The translations under genes were made by a program, and so were the position numbers. 64,000 nt of DNA, from the NCBI GenBank assembly GCA_020536535.1, contig JAHLWZ010000496.1:62001-126000 (forward strand). Direction: 5' to 3'. The DNA comes from Pelomyxa schiedti (taxonomy: Eukaryota > Protista > Evosea). The notes under the pieces were generated by a model, which worked only from the letters and a program-made list of their open reading frames with translations, did not search any database and was not told where the DNA came from. Shown piece by piece: positions 43,560 through 49,673 of the stretch (its first letter is position 1; every line of letters starts with the position of its first letter).

Positions 43560-45784
43560 ATGCGCCTCCCGTACCTTCGCATGGTGTGCGGTGTTCAGTC
43601 CAGGTGTTCAGCGTTTGTGGTGCTGGGTGTGCTCATGGTGGCGGTTGCCATTCTGGGAGGCGCGGAGTGCAGCTACACTGTGGATTGCCAGAGGGACATC
43701 AACCAAGGCCGATCTGGTGGGGGCGCCGGTGCCGTGTTCGACGTGATCGACACTATTTCTGTGAGGAGGGGCAACGAAATTTCTGTGAGTATTCAGGGAG
43801 ACCTCGTGCAGAACACTGCTTCCATGGCTTTGGTGTGGGCTCTTTTTTTGTTTTACATAAATATTCCAAGGTGTATAATTAGCACTTGGTTTATCTAACT
43901 TCCTTGATACTTTAGTACTCATATGATGATGGGGCAAAGCTGAGTCTGGTTGGAGTCAAGGCTACTAGATCGAGTTCAGGTGTTATTATCTCTGGAACTA
44001 TTCCTGTTTCGGCTCCAGTTGGATCCTATTATCCTGTTATAAATAGCGTATGGGGCTTTTCTACTGCTTAGGTATTCCCTTTAACGTCATCAAGGTGAAC
44101 ATCCAATGCAACTTCTTTGTTTCTTTCAATCCTTGGCATAGCAGTGATGATGCGTACTGTTCGTCTGATGCTTACAGAGCTGCTCACATGCAATCTACCA
44201 CTGGACTAGTTTTCCTTGACAGTGTCCGCATTGATTATGCTCTGACTTGGTCGTACGACCAGTTTGACTGGAGTATATTGAGATCTTTACAGCACTATCT
44301 GCCTTACCTCGATTCCAAGTCAAGAGCAAACCCTGCGCTTGTTGCAAGATTTTTGCACTCTCTTACTCAAGGGACCATTCTAATAGGCAGTTGGGATTCA
44401 TTTGTTGGAGGCATCAATCCACTGTGAGTACATCTTTGTTTTCTCCCTCTTACTCCATCAGATATTGGAGATCATCTACTGAGATTTTACAGCGACATGT
44501 TACATGGGGATTTGCACCAGTTCGATACGCTCAGTGCTGGGTATTTGCGGCAGTCCTCACCTCCCTTCTCCGTGGAATGGGTATTGTTACAAGACAAGTT
44601 ATGTGTCAGCCTTGCGCTCACAATGTTGCCGAGTCAGTTGCGTCATTCCTTTATTAAAACAAACCGCCAACTACCAGACTAACATATTATTACAGACTGT
44701 CACTGAAATGTTCTTTGATAGCCATGGAACCAACTGTTGTTGCAAAGATTTCTGGTGGAACTTCATAATTGGTGTGAATGTTGGCTCAGACGTAGAGATT
44801 GGTCTGGTGTACATTCCGCTTCCCAATTTCAAGCCATTGATGGAACGTTGTGTCCCCATCTCTAAATAGCGTCCTCTAAACAATACTGCCAGTTATGCAG
44901 TTGGCCCGGCTCCCCGCACAGCAATAGATGCTCAAACATATGGAAACTTTGACGTGCAATTCTTTCTGTCTGAAGTGAAGTCGTCTGTCACCTATTACCA
45001 CCCAAAGAGTGGCGTGCAGATGTATGAACTGGATCCAATCATAGAGGACAAAACACCCCGTGTATGGATAATGTCTGTAAGTCCACACCCCCATCCTTCT
45101 CTTTTTTTTTTTTAGAAATTACATACCCACACATACACACACAAAAAAAAAAAACAAAAGATAGGCAGCACTCCCACAAGTACAGCGTTTGAAATCACGG
45201 GCGATTATAGATCTGGCCGCTCAGTACTCAATTCGCCCTCTACGTTTGGCGTCAGCGTGGCACAGATAAAGACGACCTCCTCAAACACATTTGGCTACGA
45301 GATCACGGCCTCGCGCGACGTTTCATTGTCGGTCCTGGCTTCTGTTTCCCTTGGCGACCCAAATGTTCCCTGTCGCGAGTCCAACCTGGAATCGTGCGTT
45401 TGCCCGCCCCTTTCTCTTCACTTCCTTTCCTCCCCCCCTTAATTATGGGTTGGGGTGACCTGGCCCGACTCGACTCCAGAACTAATACACTATCGCACCA
45501 GGGACACATTCAAGGCCAAGTTTGACGCCGGGGAATCACGGGTGTACACGCTGAAGTTCGGGTCTGTGAGCCAGGACACGGCGTACTATGTGTACTACAG
45601 GGTGTTCCTTCGCGACACGGGCACGGAGCAGGCCGCGCTGTGGCAGAGGAAGGCGACGCCACTGTCGCTCGTGACCACGGCGCTGCGCGTGCGCACCGAG
45701 ATGGCGGAGTCCACGGACCAGGCGTTCCAGGACACCACCACGCCCCTGTGCAGCAGTTCCACCAGCTTCAACGGCAGAGTGTGA
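43560..45784 (+). CDS. Animal-type (papain-fold) transglutaminase with a signal peptide; apparent 1-nt frameshift at the catalytic His
   Basis: FNPW, WSYDQF, VRYAQCWVFAAVLTSLLRGMGI.TR, WWNF then (shifted frame) HNWCECW, QAIDGT|YAVGPAP, FDVQFFLSEV. Confidence 0.85.
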
Positions 45785-45967
45785 AAGGAATAAAGGAGTC
45801 TCATCTGTTATCCTGAGGTTCTTTTTTTATGACTAGAGTGAGAGCTCCACATCGCCCATGTGCAATCAATCACTTGGGCAACCTTGGCACTTGTGTCTAT
45901 GTTCGGAAAAACCTCCGGGAAGAGGCGGTTGGAAACCGAAGCGAAAAAACCAAGAAACTAAAACAAA

Positions 45968-48900
45968 ATGGCGGCCTTCACGACAACGAGTGCAGCGGCT
46001 ACCCCGACGCGTGTAGTTGTCGTACTTGGTCCTCCGGGATCTGGTAAAGGCACCCAATGTAAAAAACTACAGGCAAAATTGGGGTATTTTTCAATTTTCG
46101 TGCTCCCCGTTACACACCCGTTTTTTTTTTCCCCCTTGGCACTCATTGTGTGAAGTCTCGTTCACGTCTCGACTGGGGACATATTTCGTGACGCCGTGAT
46201 GAAAAATACCCCTCTGGGGCGAAAAGTTGCTCCATATGTCAACCGTTCCGACTTTGTACCAGACAACTTGGTGGTGGAGTTAATTCGGGACAGGATCGCC
46301 CGGCACGACTGCGTGACAAGAGGTGTGCTTTTGGACGGGTTTCCCAGAACCCTGCACCAGACCCAGGAACTGCTATCTCACGTCAATGTGGAGAGAGCCG
46401 TTGTCATCCAGGTCGACGACGATCAGTGCATAAAGAATATGCTGGGGAGAAAGATTGACGTGGAGACTGGTGATATTTACCACACCGAGTTCTTTCCGCC
46501 TCCGAATGCTATTCACGCATCGAGGCTTGTCCAGCGCCGCTATGATATCGACGAAGAGTCTGCGAGGCTAAGGCTGCGGGCGTTCCATGCTCAGTTGGGT
46601 TTGATTGTACCTTGCTTTGCTGGCAAGGTGCAGGCTATCAACGGGCAAAGAAAGATGGGCGTTGTTTTCAAAGATTTTCTCAAAATGCTGAATACACCTT
46701 TGTCACCTCTTTCAGAGCCGGCGGCGGCCCCTCCACGCACTTCGAGGAAAAAAAAGGCAAAGGCACCTCCTAAAGGAAAGTGTGCGGTATGTCTCACTGA
46801 AGACGCGGACTTCTTGGTGGTTCCATGTGGCCACCAGTGTGGATGCAAGGGATGCCTAACGGCAATAAATGAGAGCACCGCTCAGTGTCCGATATGCAGG
46901 TCACACATATCCGGGCTCATTCAAGTTTACAGCTGTGGAGTTATAGAAGAAGAACCCGAGGTATTCTTTCTCTCCAATTCTGACAGTCAGTAACAGTGAT
47001 TCCTCTTACAGGGTCTCAACATGGAAGATGTTGACATGTCGTTTAGACCTATCACAACCGCAACCGCAACAACAACTACAGCTTCTGCGGGGAATCGGCT
47101 TTCCGCTGACCAGGCAGCTGATGGGTGGGGGGACGAAGTTAGTGAAACGGCTCATGAAGAAGTTCTACCTGAAGACTTAGTCGAACTCCAAGTTTCACCT
47201 TGCATAACCCCTGTGCTAAATCAGCCAACGCCCGTGGCGGTTACAGTACGCATACCTGATCTTCTTACTAGAACACCTGTAGATATCTGCTGCTGTGTTG
47301 ATGTTAGTGGATCAATGGGGACTGAGGTAACATACCGTGATGATAATGGCAATGTTATACAAAACGATGGCCTCACTGTTCTGGATATCGTAAAACACAC
47401 AGTATCTACTGTAATCCACCTTTTGGGTGATGATGACCGTCTCGGCATCGTAGTTTTTGATGATAACGCCTCGACGGTACTTCCTCTCACTCAGTTGGAT
47501 GCTCCTGGACGTGCTAAAGCCATGGATGCAGCTTCAAAACTAGTTCCCTTAGAGAATACTAATATGTGGGCTGGCATGCTTGAAGGGATGGAGGTGTTAC
47601 GCACTCCTCCAGGAACAACTACTTCCACCTCTGCCAGGAAAAAGTTTCTTTTGGTTCTAACAGACGGACAACCAAATATTATTCCACCGAAAGGTCACAT
47701 ACCCGAACTGAGAGCCTATATGGAAAAGCATCCAGACTTCAAATTCCAGATAAATACCTTTGGTGTTGGCTACGAACTGGATAGCGAGCTACTTGTGAGT
47801 GTTGCATCTGAAGGAGGCGGCACTTTTGCTTTTATCCCCGATGCAAAACTGATAGGAACTTGTATTGTTAACTGTGTAGCTAATGCTGTAACTACCACAA
47901 CTCAACAAGCGTCATTGCATTTGATGCTGAAGGGTGGTGCCACCTTCGCAGGACCTGTTTTAGGAGGTACTTCTGTGAAAGAAGTGACGTGGGGACGTGT
48001 AGTTTCTGTTGGTGCACTGCATCTTGGCCAAGTTCTTGATGTTGTTGTACCTGTAACAATACCAGCAAAGAAAGGCGACTATCTTGAGGCTGTGCTAGTG
48101 TGGGCGAACTCCAAGGGAAAGGAAGTTCGTGTTAGCGCTGTAGGAAACAGCCGTAATATCACCGACCAGTCTGTCAATGCCAACACCCGCTGCAACGTTA
48201 TTGACAAGGTTTCTCAAATCATTAAAGCAGGCTGTGGCCGAACAGGGAAGAGTGACATGGAAAATCTTCGAATTGATACTGATGCTACGAGACAAAATCA
48301 TTCTTGCGATCTTCTCGAAGCCTTGTATGCGGATGTAAATGGAAGAATGAGCAAAGCTGTAAATCAGAAAGCCAGGTATGACAGATGGGGTCGGCACTAT
48401 TTGAGAGCACTTGTTCGCGCTCATCAGGTCCAAGTATGCACTAATATGCTTGATCCAGGACTCCAACTCTATGGGGGCAGCCTTTTCAAGCAAAATTCCG
48501 AAGCCGGTGGAAAAATATTTATCACTCTTCCCCCACCAGTCCATGGAGGCGCAACCCAAACCACAACACAGGCCACAACGAAGAAGAAGAGAAAGAACAA
48601 GAAGTCAAACACAACTGCCACAACTGCCACCTCAGCTTCCGCACCTCCTCCAAAGGCGCCAACTCCTCCACGTGAGCCCACTCCACCAGTCATGGAAACA
48701 TACTATGGTGGAGGTGGTGGTGGCTGTTTTGCTGGAGACTGCACTGTACATGTACATAATGTTGGCGAAACTCGCATTGATCAACTGCGGAAGGGAGATA
48801 TCGTTCTCACAAGCGGATCCAAACTGGCTACAGTTATTTGTATTATATCACTCAAACGCACCGGGCCTCTTGTTATGTTCCCCGGTGGTCTTAAGATTAC

Positions 48901-49285
48901 TCCTCACCATCCCGCTCTTCTTCACGGCTCTTGGCGCAAGCCTAGCTCTATGGTGGGGAGCCCTGGTGTAAGCGAAGTCGAAAACCCCAGTGGTGTAGTC
49001 TACAACCTTGTGTTGGATTCTGCACATGTACTTGTAGTCAACGGCATCGCATGTGTCACCTGGGGTCACAATCTCAAAGGGAACTCTGAAGAGGAATCCC
49101 GCGTTCTGTATCACAGCTTCTACGGAACAGAAAAAGTTGTGGAGGCACTCAAAATATTGTCTAGCTGGGAGAGTGGTTTCCTACAAGTAGAACCTATACG
49201 GCACAATTCCAGTGGTCACACCATTGGTTTTTCTATGGTAAAACTTTCTTGTCCACCATCACCTATATCTCACCTTCGAATTTAA
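45968..49285 (+). CDS. Adenylate kinase - RING-HC - vWA - Vwaint - Hint(Vint) fusion protein, 3 exons
   Basis: P-loop GPPGSGKGTQ, STGDIFR, LDGFPRT, lid GRKID..TG.IYH. C3HC4 RING at 46781-46900. Phase-0 intron 46961-47011 joins in frame to vWA (DVSGSMG, LTDGQPN, FGVGY), Vwaint (RWGRHYL..HQ.Q.C.N..DPG) and Hint (GG|CFAG, ITPHHP, VYNLVLD..H). Confidence 0.85.
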
Positions 49286-49673
49286 GGTAACCTCCTGGCT
49301 CTCCGGTTGAACGAACAATGGGTTGAACAATGTGGTACCTATGGCAACCTGTTTACTGTGAGTGTTTAAAAGAAAGAAAAAAAAAGCCGAAAATTTACAA
49401 GCATTAAACCCTTAGAACGATCAGATCTAAAGATCCAAAAAACACTTTAAAAGATAGCAATTAATTCGGCGATCACAACAAGGTTGGTGGTGCTCATTAT
49501 TACACGTGAACCACGACGGCAAACACGGCAAACAACACAAACAAATCGTACACAACCACTCTTCGGGAGATCTTTTTTGTGTTGTGCTGTTTGATTTCCG
49601 TGTTGGCATGAAGCAAACAACAAAAAACAAACAAACAGGAACTGCCAGTTAGGCAGTAGACTGGAGACGCAAA

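What the first reader, a model, noticed from the sequence alone, without database searches (positions are those of the whole stretch)
45968..49285. Adenylate kinase-RING-vWA-Vwaint-Hint polyprotein: a candidate nucleotide-sensing, self-processing ubiquitin-ligase system
The ORF track splits this locus, but a canonical 51-nt phase-0 intron (GAG|GTATTC...TTACAG|GGT, 46961-47011) joins the ADK-RING exon in frame to the vWA-Hint exon. The product is about 1,070 aa. The ADK keeps its P-loop, AMP-site Arg and DGFPR. The RING is an intact C3HC4, the vWA keeps its DxSxS MIDAS, and the Hint keeps Cys1 and TxxH. Vint proteins with U-box or RING N-termini are described, but I know of none carrying an adenylate kinase. 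Inference: the AMP/ADP/ATP state sensed by ADK controls E3 activity and/or Hint autoprocessing.
Basis: partly seen in the sequence, partly recalled or inferred. Interest (0 to 1): 0.85.

Follow-up and report, generated by a model that had tools for sequence, protein, structure and literature searches.

The report
Adenylate kinase-RING self-cleaving Vint protein
This is a real, expressed amoeba gene (Pelomyxa schiedti) that joins an intact adenylate kinase, a ubiquitin-ligase RING finger, a metal-dependent binding domain and a self-cleaving Hint domain in one 1,056-residue protein; it belongs to a conserved family that databases hold but no paper describes.

Summary
RNA contigs from three runs splice out the 51-nt intron 46961-47011, so the ADK-RING and vWA-Hint parts are one transcript. 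Two corrections apply. There is also a 72-nt intron in the ADK (46084-46155). The 4-exon CDS translates exactly to a 1,056-aa NCBI protein of Pelomyxa schiedti, misnamed "calcium channel alpha-2/delta-2".

The architecture is not unique. Dozens of ~1,000-1,150-aa orthologues occur in dinoflagellates, a chrysophyte, other Amoebozoa and bdelloid rotifers, plus a second Pelomyxa paralogue that the scan also noted on other DNA (s1-377957). They form a clade separate from the U-box/plain Vint proteins.

Across about 35 orthologues these residues are invariant or nearly so:
- the ADK catalytic residues
- all eight RING zinc ligands
- the five MIDAS residues
- the Hint Gly-Gly|Cys-Phe junction and TxxH

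The core RING-VWA-sandwich-helical module resembles the plant WAV3 E3 ligases. The Hint domain matches the Tetrahymena Vint crystal structure 8R2C.

No paper in the searched library describes an ADK-bearing Vint. That ADK nucleotide state gates the E3 or the cleavage remains untested inference. Verdict: a new variant of a known kind, of moderate interest.

The parts
45968..46083 (+). Exon 1: start codon and ADK P-loop (GPPGSGKGT, nt 46028-46054)
   Evidence: The exon model translates exactly to P0001. No RNA contig covers this exon.
46084..46155 (+). Intron 1, 72 nt, GT..AG, phase 2, inside the ADK domain
   Evidence: Left unspliced it gives a stop at 46151-46153. Orthologues read straight through KLG-LVHVSTGD. 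It is not covered by RNA contigs.
46156..46960 (+). Exon 2: rest of the ADK (domain aa 16-218 = nt 46013-46693), a disordered basic linker, and the RING (aa 248-297 = nt 46781-46930)
   Evidence: Pfam ADK 5e-23 and zf-C3HC4_3 3e-13. Catalytic and zinc-ligand conservation. RNA contigs cover it.
46961..47011 (+).
   Evidence: Spliced in contigs of runs X1, X2 and X3 (table 5).
47012..49237 (+). Exon 3: acidic linker, VWA, beta-sandwich, helical Vwaint region, disordered linker, and most of the Vint domain
   Evidence: Pfam VWA, Vwaint and Vint. AF2 domain layout. Continuous RNA contigs.
47117..47140 (+). Conserved acidic-Trp motif (aa 343-350, W346) in the disordered RING-VWA linker
   Evidence: Trp is present in 33 of 35 ADK-clade proteins. 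The motif is absent in 0 of 28 U-box/plain Vints.
47279..47890 (+). VWA domain (aa 397-600). MIDAS D404-x-S406-x-S408 is at nt 47300-47314, with T490 and D525
   Evidence: The five MIDAS residues are 36/36 in both Vint clades. Fold hits are 4fx5 and ArnAB 8s05.
47894..48526 (+). Beta-sandwich (aa 602-685) plus a helical bundle (aa 692-812) that holds Pfam Vwaint (aa 741-801, nt 48311-48493)
   Evidence: AF2 pLDDT is about 90 here. Foldseek aligns aa 218-817 to Arabidopsis WAV3, WAVH1, WAVH2 and EDA40.
48710..48730 (+). Predicted autocleavage junction GGGGG|CF (G878|C879; the Cys codon is 48725-48727)
   Evidence: G874, G877, G878, C879 and F880 are invariant in 35-36 orthologues.
48725..49237 (+). 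Vint (Hint-fold) domain, aa 879-1049. TxxH is at nt 48899-48910
   Evidence: Pfam Vint 7e-28. The AF2 model (pLDDT 91.5) matches the Tetrahymena Vint crystal structure 8R2C at E 8e-17, TM 0.74/0.83. Sequence E 9e-16.
49238..49286 (+).
   Evidence: Spliced in contigs of runs X1 and X2. Sequence.
49287..49310 (+). Exon 4: last 7 codons (VTSWLSG) and the TGA stop at 49308-49310. The 3' UTR runs to at least 49372

Best explanation
The locus is a single four-exon gene of the anaerobic amoeba Pelomyxa schiedti. It encodes a cytosolic 1,056-aa precursor laid out as ADK, RING, VWA, beta-sandwich, helical Vwaint, then Vint. It belongs to a conserved, undescribed subfamily of the eukaryotic Vint proteins.

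Most likely mechanism:
1. The C-terminal Hint-fold Vint domain performs an N-to-S acyl shift at Gly878|Cys879 and cleaves itself off. This releases a roughly 96-kDa ADK-RING-VWA-Vwaint fragment. This step is inferred from invariant catalytic residues and the fold, not shown.
2. That fragment acts as a WAV3-like RING E3 ubiquitin ligase. Its IAP/MUL1-type RING recruits an E2~Ub. Its VWA MIDAS site, together with the sandwich and helical module, holds the substrate or partner. This is inferred from homology to characterised plant E3s.
3. The N-terminal domain is a catalytically competent adenylate kinase (AMP + ATP <-> 2 ADP), not a degenerate relic. This is inferred from the invariance of every catalytic residue.

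What the kinase is for is the weakest link. My preferred guess, at about 1 in 4, is that its nucleotide-dependent open/closed cycle or its local AMP/ADP turnover tunes the ligase or the cleavage.
For: One gene:
- RNA contigs bridge both 3' introns.
- The exon model equals NCBI protein P0001 exactly.
- Transcriptome-derived orthologues have the same collinear layout.

Modules:
- Pfam E-values run from 5e-23 to 7e-28.
- The AF2 model has pLDDT around 90 in each domain.

ADK activity:
- K27, R50, R103, Q107, R137, R166, D169, D171 and R178 are invariant or at least 90% conserved in 35-36 orthologues.
- The fold matches Ap5A-bound ADKs at TM 0.88.

RING:
- All eight zinc ligands are present in 34/34.
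- The nearest solved RINGs are BIRC3, MUL1 and MGRN1. The CPxCR arginine and the V-[FY] tail are kept.

VWA and core:
- MIDAS is 36/36.
- The core aligns to the WAV3, WAVH and EDA40 E3 ligases. These are experimentally characterised E3s (PMC9437102, PMC11047095).

Vint:
- The GG|CF junction, T937, H940, C988, H993 and H1008 are invariant.
- It matches crystal structure 8R2C.

Clade:
- All 36 ADK-bearing rows lie on one side of a branch with SH-aLRT 100. All 15 U-box rows lie on the other side.
Against: - No biochemical activity of any domain has been measured for any member.
- No Vint protein has a known cellular function.
- The linkers ADK-RING (aa 224-244), RING-VWA (aa 299-357) and Vwaint-Vint (aa 822-862) are predicted disordered. 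There is no structural evidence for allosteric coupling between the ADK and the other modules.
- RING-less ADK-VWA-Vint paralogues exist (P0007 of Gymnodinium smaydae, and P0017). Some clade members with a true Met start lack both ADK and RING (P0056, P0059, P0061). The modules are therefore separable.
- Exon 1 and intron 1 have no RNA coverage.
- The tree was a quick search without bootstraps.
Confidence: 0.6

Rival explanations
1. The adenylate kinase is cargo or a local housekeeping enzyme, not a sensor. In this reading the VWA/Vwaint/Vint scaffold, with or without the RING, serves to place, anchor or turn over an active ADK at a particular site. Flagellar and organellar ADK fusions work this way. 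Nucleotide state would not regulate the ligase or the cleavage.
For: - The ADK catalytic set is fully conserved, as expected of a working enzyme.
- The RING can be lost while the ADK is kept (P0007, P0017, P0057).
- Disordered tethers separate the domains.
- Many other multi-domain ADK fusions exist.
Against: - An E3 domain, either RING or U-box, in front of the VWA recurs in both Vint clades and in plants. This points to ubiquitination as the output, not enzyme placement.
- No targeting signal was seen.
Confidence: 0.25
2. The Hint thioester is used for ligation, not mere cleavage. The invariant GxGGG-Cys junction would create a C-terminal glycyl thioester on the ADK-RING-VWA fragment. That thioester would then be passed to a small-molecule or protein nucleophile, as cholesterol is for Hedgehog. 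The ligase would end up covalently tagged or anchored.
For: - The Gly run before Cys1 is invariant in the ADK clade. The U-box/plain clade has P or G at -1 and variable residues before it.
- The region after the Hint core (aa 994-1050, with invariant H1008) is conserved and aligns with the Tetrahymena Vint structure.
- From memory, the 8R2C authors proposed an adduct-recognition region. I could not read that paper here.
Against: - No adduct is known for any Vint protein.
- There is no sterol-recognition region.
- The Gly run may simply be a flexible spacer.
- Hedgehog also has G|CF, so the motif alone does not discriminate.
Confidence: 0.2
3. It is a conflict or immunity module, not a metabolic regulator. 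The VWA/Vwaint would act as a sensor or decoy for foreign factors. The Hint domain would release an effector on triggering.
For: - The nearest Atlas clusters of U-box-VWA-Vint proteins are mostly from Nucleocytoviricota.
- Kinase-VWA-Vwaint fusions are wheat rust-resistance genes with a proposed decoy role (PMC10260399).
- The family is present in bdelloid rotifers, which are rich in foreign genes.
Against: - The family shows slow, orthologue-like conservation: 35-45% identity across supergroups with invariant sites and only one or two copies in Pelomyxa. That does not look like arms-race evolution.
- An adenylate kinase is not an obvious effector.
Confidence: 0.1
4. It is a gene-model artefact: two adjacent genes (ADK-RING and VWA-Vint) are wrongly merged, with translation ending at the TAA at 46991-46993.
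For: The unspliced sequence has an in-frame stop in the 51-nt interval.
Against: - Three RNA runs contain the spliced junction. One contig spans 46449-49372.
- More than 30 orthologues from independent transcriptomes and genomes are collinear fusions.
Confidence: 0.01

Closest known systems
Vint proteins (VWA-Vwaint-Vint; Buerglin 2008, PMC2362128; Pfam PF14623/PF14624; Tetrahymena Vint crystal structure 8R2C)
   Same: - The VWA with a perfect MIDAS, the Vwaint helices and the C-terminal Hint-fold domain with Cys1 and TxxH come in the same order.
- There is no signal peptide.
- The Vint fold matches 8R2C at TM 0.74/0.83.
   Different: - It carries an N-terminal adenylate kinase plus an IAP-type C3HC4 RING. 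Described Vints have nothing or a U-box there.
- It forms a separate clade (SH-aLRT 100).
- It has an invariant GxGGG|CF junction.
- It has a clade-specific acidic-Trp linker motif.
Plant WAV3 / WAVH1 / WAVH2 / EDA40 / SOR1 E3 ubiquitin ligases (RING-VWA-Vwaint)
   Same: - The order is RING, then VWA, then beta-sandwich, then helical Vwaint.
- Foldseek aligns aa 218-817 to all four Arabidopsis members.
- These plant proteins are experimentally shown E3 ligases.
   Different: - The plant proteins have no Hint domain and no ADK.
- Overall TM is low (0.2-0.3) because of flexible linkers.
Hedgehog C-terminal autoprocessing (Hog/Hint) domain and inteins
   Same: It shares the Hint fold (1AT0 E 6e-5; DnaB inteins about 1e-6), the Gly|Cys-Phe scissile junction and the TxxH motif.
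   Different: - There is no sterol-recognition region and no secretion.
- There is no C-extein, so no splicing.
- The second nucleophile is unknown.
Canonical long-LID adenylate kinases (e.g. Aquifex 2RGX, E. coli 1AKE, maize 1ZAK)
   Same: - Sequence E is about 2e-39 and identity 32-36%.
- TM is 0.88 to the Ap5A-bound closed forms.
- All catalytic Lys, Arg and Asp residues are kept, and so is the adenine-specifying Gln.
   Different: - It is fused to an E3/VWA/Hint polyprotein.
- The LID lacks the Cys4 zinc site.
IAP / MUL1 / MGRN1-type RING domains (Pfam zf-C3HC4_3)
   Same: - The best solved matches are BIRC3 (2e-8), MUL1 and MGRN1.
- It keeps the CPxCR arginine. From my own knowledge, this Arg is the 'linchpin' in BIRC7.
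- It keeps the hydrophobic-aromatic tail.
   Different: It sits in the middle of a polyprotein, between an enzyme and a VWA. IAPs carry this RING at the extreme C-terminus.
Voltage-gated calcium channel alpha-2/delta subunit (the name on the NCBI record)
   Same: Only a VWA domain with a MIDAS is shared.
   Different: - No VWA_N, Cache or VGCC_alpha2 domain was found by Pfam.
- No N-terminal TM segment or signal sequence is evident.
- The name is an annotation transfer error.

Membership tests
Vint proteins (VWA-Vwaint-Vint) | VWA domain with a complete MIDAS (DxSxS...T...D) | tested here: met
   Pfam VWA 2e-11. D404, S406, S408, T490 and D525 are 36/36.
Vint proteins (VWA-Vwaint-Vint) | Vwaint domain between the VWA and the Hint | tested here: met
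   Pfam Vwaint 1e-19 against a cutoff of 23.5 bits. It falls in the helical bundle aa 741-801.
Vint proteins (VWA-Vwaint-Vint) | C-terminal Vint-type Hint fold with Cys1 (motif A) and TxxH (motif B) | tested here: met
   Pfam Vint 7e-28. 8R2C matches at E 8e-17, TM 0.74/0.83. C879, T937 and H940 are invariant.
Vint proteins (VWA-Vwaint-Vint) | Autoproteolytic cleavage at the Gly|Cys junction | not testable with these tools
   This needs recombinant protein with and without the C879A change.
Adenylate kinase (PF00406, EC 2.7.4.3) | P-loop Lys, AMP-site Arg (TGDxxR), DGFPR Arg, LID Arg/Asp set and adenine-specifying Gln | tested here: met
   K27, R50, R103, Q107, R137, R166, D169, D171 and R178 are invariant or at least 90% conserved in 35-36 orthologues. 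Equivalence to the E. coli residues rests on my own alignment and knowledge.
Adenylate kinase (PF00406, EC 2.7.4.3) | ADK fold with CORE, NMP-binding and LID parts | tested here: met
   Foldseek TM 0.88-0.89 and rmsd about 2 A to Ap5A-bound ADKs. phmmer 2e-39 to Aquifex ADK.
Adenylate kinase (PF00406, EC 2.7.4.3) | AMP:ATP phosphotransferase activity | not testable with these tools
   This needs an enzyme assay.
RING-type E3 ubiquitin ligase | Eight cross-braced zinc ligands (C3HC4) | tested here: met
   C248, C251, C263, H265, C267 or C269, C272, C283 and C286 are 34/34. Pfam zf-C3HC4_3 3e-13.
RING-type E3 ubiquitin ligase | E2-dependent ubiquitin transfer | not testable with these tools
   Only similarity to the active RINGs BIRC3, MUL1 and MGRN1 is available.
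WAV3-type plant E3 ligases | RING followed by VWA and Vwaint in one chain | tested here: met
   Domain order. Foldseek hits to WAV3, WAVH1, WAVH2 and EDA40 at E 1e-19 to 5e-18.
WAV3-type plant E3 ligases | Absence of a Hint domain, and plant lineage | tested here: not met
   This protein keeps a Vint domain and an ADK. It is a relative of that family, not a member.
VGCC alpha-2/delta subunit (the database name) | VWA_N, Cache and VGCC_alpha2 domains, and a secreted ectodomain | tested here: not met
   None of these appears among the Pfam hits. The N-terminus is an ADK.

The most novel reading that the evidence does not exclude
The family is a direct transducer from adenylate energy charge to ubiquitination. 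The open/closed cycle of an active ADK, set by AMP, ADP and ATP, would gate a tethered RING E3 and/or the Hint self-cleavage. Cellular energy state would then be written straight into protein ubiquitination without AMPK-type kinases. In a more radical variant, the invariant GGG-Cys thioester lets the whole N-fragment be conjugated to a target, ubiquitin-like.
Probability: 0.15. Interest if true: 0.85.

Novelty: new variant of a known kind. Interest (0 to 1): 0.55.

Why it matters
Vint proteins have been known since 2008 and are found across eukaryotes and giant viruses. No cellular function is known for any of them.

This subfamily adds two domains with well-understood, easily assayed chemistry: an adenylate kinase and an IAP-type RING. 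That makes Vint function experimentally approachable, because cleavage, kinase activity and ubiquitination can all be read out in vitro, with or without nucleotides.

An enzyme of adenine-nucleotide homeostasis fused to an E3 ligase is, as far as I could find, not described elsewhere. The fusion is conserved from amoebae to dinoflagellates and bdelloid rotifers. That argues for a real functional link between the two, whatever it turns out to be.

The finding also corrects a misleading database name ("calcium channel alpha-2/delta-2"). And it shows Vint genes in an animal lineage, contrary to the original survey.

Tried and rejected
1. Two-gene reading. Rejected by spliced RNA contigs.
2. Rejected: it lies in a spliced 49-nt intron.
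3. Calcium-channel alpha-2/delta annotation. Rejected: only the VWA is shared.
4. Degenerate or pseudo-kinase ADK. Rejected on the invariance of all catalytic residues.
5. Differences between RNA and DNA at 46843-46909 in run X3 as editing. Rejected. The loose end there encodes the paralogue's CAVCLTANAD, so the contig is an assembler chimera with paralogue P0002.
6. Literature searches. I searched for Vint with adenylate kinase, for Vwaint, for Vint autoprocessing and for the paper on structure 8R2C. Only Buerglin 2008 and the plant Vwaint papers turned up. The 8R2C paper is not held, so what I say about its adduct-recognition idea is from memory.
7. Search with ADK-RING alone against 1.84 billion representatives.
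   - It mostly returned multi-ADK proteins.
   - About 32 of the top 150 match ADK plus RING in one stretch.
   - About 18 of those are full length. The short ones (266-570 aa) cannot be told apart from contig fragments, so a free-standing ADK-RING protein is neither shown nor excluded.
8. 'ADK-less' members of the ADK clade. Several are plainly 5'-truncated. P0005 starts in the RING tail and P0068 starts inside the RING. Counts of losses in the tree are therefore inflated.
9. Inter-domain contacts. I could not inspect them because no PAE or coordinates were returned. No claim about domain packing is made.
Full report
**What is in the sequence**

ORF listing shows the locus broken into pieces. 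Reading the DNA and laying public RNA contigs on it gives a four-exon gene on the + strand: 45968..46083, 46156..46960, 47012..49237, 49287..49310. The introns are 72, 51 and 49 nt, and all are GT..AG. This model translates exactly to a 1,056-aa protein already in NCBI for Pelomyxa schiedti (P0001), so the window is from that archamoeba.

One 2,865-nt contig runs from 46449 to 49372 with both downstream introns spliced out.

Its proposed stop at 49285 lies inside that intron, and the true stop is TGA at 49308-49310. Exon 1 and intron 1 have no RNA coverage. They rest on the annotation and on orthologues that read straight through the junction.

Mismatches in run X3 at 46843-46909 come from an assembler chimera with the paralogue. 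The loose end there encodes the paralogue's RING sequence.

**Domains**

| Domain | Pfam E-value |
|---|---|
| ADK | 5e-23 |
| zf-C3HC4_3 | 3e-13 |
| VWA | 2e-11 |
| Vwaint | 1e-19 |
| Vint | 7e-28 |

An AlphaFold2 model built on 35 orthologues has mean pLDDT 80.9. It resolves this layout:

| Residues | Element |
|---|---|
| 16-218 | ADK |
| 224-244 | disordered basic linker |
| 246-298 | RING |
| 299-357 | disordered acidic linker |
| 365-387 | two beta strands |
| 397-600 | VWA |
| 602-685 | beta-sandwich |
| 692-812 | helical bundle, holding Pfam Vwaint at 741-801 |
| 822-862 | disordered linker |
| 879-1050 | Vint |

Fold searches gave these matches:
- The ADK superposes on Ap5A-bound adenylate kinases at TM 0.88-0.89.
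- VWA plus sandwich matches the bacterial VWA 4fx5 and the archaeal ArnAB 'Sec23/24 core'.
- Residues 218-817 align to the Arabidopsis E3 ligases WAV3, WAVH1, WAVH2 and EDA40.
- A separate model of the Vint domain (pLDDT 91.5) has as top hit the crystal structure of the Tetrahymena Vint domain, 8R2C. That match is E 8e-17 with TM 0.74/0.83. BIL domains, inteins and the Hedgehog autoprocessing domain follow. Sequence alone gives E 9e-16 to 8R2C.

**It is a family, not a one-off**

A search with the VWA-Vint exon returned 152 relatives. More than 30 of them are 970-1,220 aa long and carry ADK + RING + VWA + Vwaint + Vint in the same order.

Named sources:
- a second Pelomyxa paralogue (58% identity over the VWA-Vint exon)
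- the testate amoeba Pyxidicula operculata
- the dinoflagellates Polarella, Symbiodinium, Yihiella and an unnamed Dinoflagellata sp. (Gymnodinium smaydae and Tripos fusus carry the RING-less ADK form, see below)
- the chrysophyte Paraphysomonas vestita
- the bdelloid rotifers Rotaria, Adineta (including a chromosome-scale A. vaga contig) and Didymodactylos

UniRef names several of them simply 'Adenylate kinase'.

A quick maximum-likelihood tree of the VWA-to-end region was built from 96 rows. It has a branch with SH-aLRT 100 that separates two groups:
- One is a 57-row clade holding all 36 ADK-bearing proteins.
- The other is a 39-row clade holding all 15 U-box Vints and the plain fungal or protist Vints.

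Many 'ADK-less' rows in the first clade are 5'-truncated gene calls, for example ones that start inside or just after the RING. A few are real variants. P0007 and P0017 keep the ADK but have lost the RING. P0056, P0059 and P0061 have a true Met start and neither domain.

**Are the modules functional?**

| Module | Conserved residues | Conservation |
|---|---|---|
| ADK | K27 (P-loop), R50 (TGDxxR), R103 (DGFPR), Q107, R137, R166, D169, D171, R178 | invariant or at least 90% |
| RING | eight zinc ligands, plus the CPxCR arginine and the V-[FY] tail | 34/34 for ligands and Arg; 33/34 for the aromatic tail residue |
| MIDAS | D404, S406, S408, T490, D525 | 36/36 in both Vint clades |
| Hint | G877, G878, C879, F880, T937, H940, C988, H993, H1008 | invariant or nearly so |

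These counts come from 35-36 full-length orthologues. By my alignment, the ADK residues correspond to the E. coli catalytic set K13, R36, R88, Q92, R123, R156, D158, D159 and R167. The conserved RING features are also seen in BIRC3, MUL1 and MGRN1, the nearest solved RINGs.

Such conservation over a family that is only 35-45% identical overall says all four chemistries are under selection.

**Features specific to the ADK clade**

- The junction is invariantly G-x-G-G-G|C-F. The U-box/plain clade has Pro or Gly at -1 and variable residues before it.
- A short acidic-Trp motif sits in the disordered RING-VWA linker. Its consensus is D-D-E-W-S/P-E/D-D, and here it is aa 343-350 (nt 47117-47140). 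It is present in 33 of 35 clade members, including those that lack ADK and RING, and in 0 of 28 members of the other clade.

**How it most likely works**

Shown: one mRNA, one ORF, intact motifs, confident folds, and membership of the Vint family.

Inferred:
- The Vint domain performs the standard Hint N-to-S acyl shift at G878|C879. It removes itself and frees an ADK-RING-VWA-Vwaint fragment of about 96 kDa.
- That fragment is an E3 ligase of the WAV3 kind. WAV3 and its relatives are experimentally shown E3s (PMC9437102, PMC11047095, PMC5924906). The RING would bind an E2~Ub, and the MIDAS-bearing VWA/sandwich/helical module would bind the substrate or partner.
- The ADK is a working AMP:ATP phosphotransferase.

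The link between the kinase and the rest is open. But it is supported only by adjacency and co-conservation, and three things weaken it: the disordered tethers, the RING-less variants and the ADK-less variants. I put it at roughly one in four within the overall explanation.

Rivals:
- The ADK is cargo or a local enzyme.
- The glycyl thioester is used for ligation to an unknown nucleophile.
- The family has a conflict or immunity role. This is suggested by giant-virus U-box Vints and by the wheat kinase-VWA-Vwaint resistance genes (PMC10260399).

**Comparison with what is known**

Buerglin (2008, PMC2362128) defined the Vint family. That paper noted a U-box in four members, pointed to an Arabidopsis RING-VWA relative, and stated that Vints are absent from Metazoa. 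No adenylate kinase is mentioned there.

Searches of about 8.4 million papers and preprints found nothing that joins Vint or Vwaint with adenylate kinase. The Pelomyxa genome paper only counts 'six AKs' (PMC8887013). The paper behind structure 8R2C is not in the library. From memory, it concerns the isolated Tetrahymena Vint domain and proposes an adduct-recognition region.

The thing is therefore a member of the Vint family by every testable criterion. It represents an undescribed subfamily with a new N-terminal enzyme-plus-RING module: a new variant of a known kind. It is catalogued in databases under uninformative or wrong names and is uncharacterised.

**Verdict**

Interest is moderate (0.55). 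This is not a unique oddity but a conserved, widespread, four-activity protein, and its assayable domains could finally make Vint biology testable. The scan also flagged the paralogue on another piece of this genome (s1-377957).

Noticed in passing
window 47117-47140 (aa 343-350): A conserved acidic-tryptophan short motif (about DDEW[SP][ED]D) sits in the disordered RING-VWA linker. It is present in 33 of 35 ADK-clade Vints and absent in 0 of 28 U-box/plain Vints. Clade members that lack ADK and RING keep it. Its function is unknown. It might be a docking motif, possibly a pseudo-ligand for the MIDAS.
   Followed up: partly
window 46811-46958, RNA run X3 contig 10: A cluster of about 20 mismatches and indels, plus a 145-nt loose end that encodes the paralogue's RING (CAVCLTANAD). 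The contig is an assembler chimera between this gene and its 58%-identical paralogue P0002. This implies the paralogue is also expressed. It is not RNA editing.
   Followed up: partly
P0066, P0123-P0136 (bdelloid rotifers; not in window): Full-length ADK-RING-Vint genes occur in Rotaria, Adineta (including an 18-Mb A. vaga chromosome contig) and Didymodactylos. The original Vint survey reported the family absent from Metazoa. In the quick tree they nest among Amoebozoa (Pyxidicula, Arcella). That is compatible with horizontal acquisition.
   Followed up: partly
Atlas clusters (not in window): The nearest ESM-Atlas clusters are U-box-VWA-Vwaint-Vint proteins. Their recorded taxa are 63-100% viruses, mostly Nucleocytoviricota. 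Giant viruses therefore carry many Vint genes.
   Followed up: no
P0007 (Gymnodinium smaydae), P0017, P0057 (Tripos fusus): Some dinoflagellate paralogues keep the ADK, VWA and (where complete) Vint but lack the RING. P0007 is sister to a RING-bearing protein with SH-aLRT 100, so the RING loss is recent.
   Followed up: partly
window 45968-49310 (NCBI record of P0001 and P0002): Both Pelomyxa paralogues are named 'Voltage-dependent calcium channel subunit alpha-2/delta-2' in NCBI. This is an annotation-transfer error based on the VWA domain alone.
   Followed up: yes
window 45600-45788: RNA contigs of runs X2 and X3 cover 45600 to about 45788 and run on to the left. Depth then drops to zero until 46148. 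This is probably the end of a neighbouring transcript. The 5' end of the ADK-RING-Vint mRNA is therefore not defined by these data.
   Followed up: no
window 48550 and 48598: C>T differences are seen in the RNA contigs of run X1 (table 3; the contig of X3 also shows two differences on this stretch). They are most simply allelic or strain variation. No DNA run was checked.
   Followed up: no
window about 46661-46780 (aa 224-246) and about 48596-48620 (aa 836-847): Lys/Arg-rich patches (RKKKAKAPPKGK and KKKRKNKK) lie in the disordered linkers and look like nuclear-localisation signals. Conservation across orthologues was not examined.
   Followed up: no
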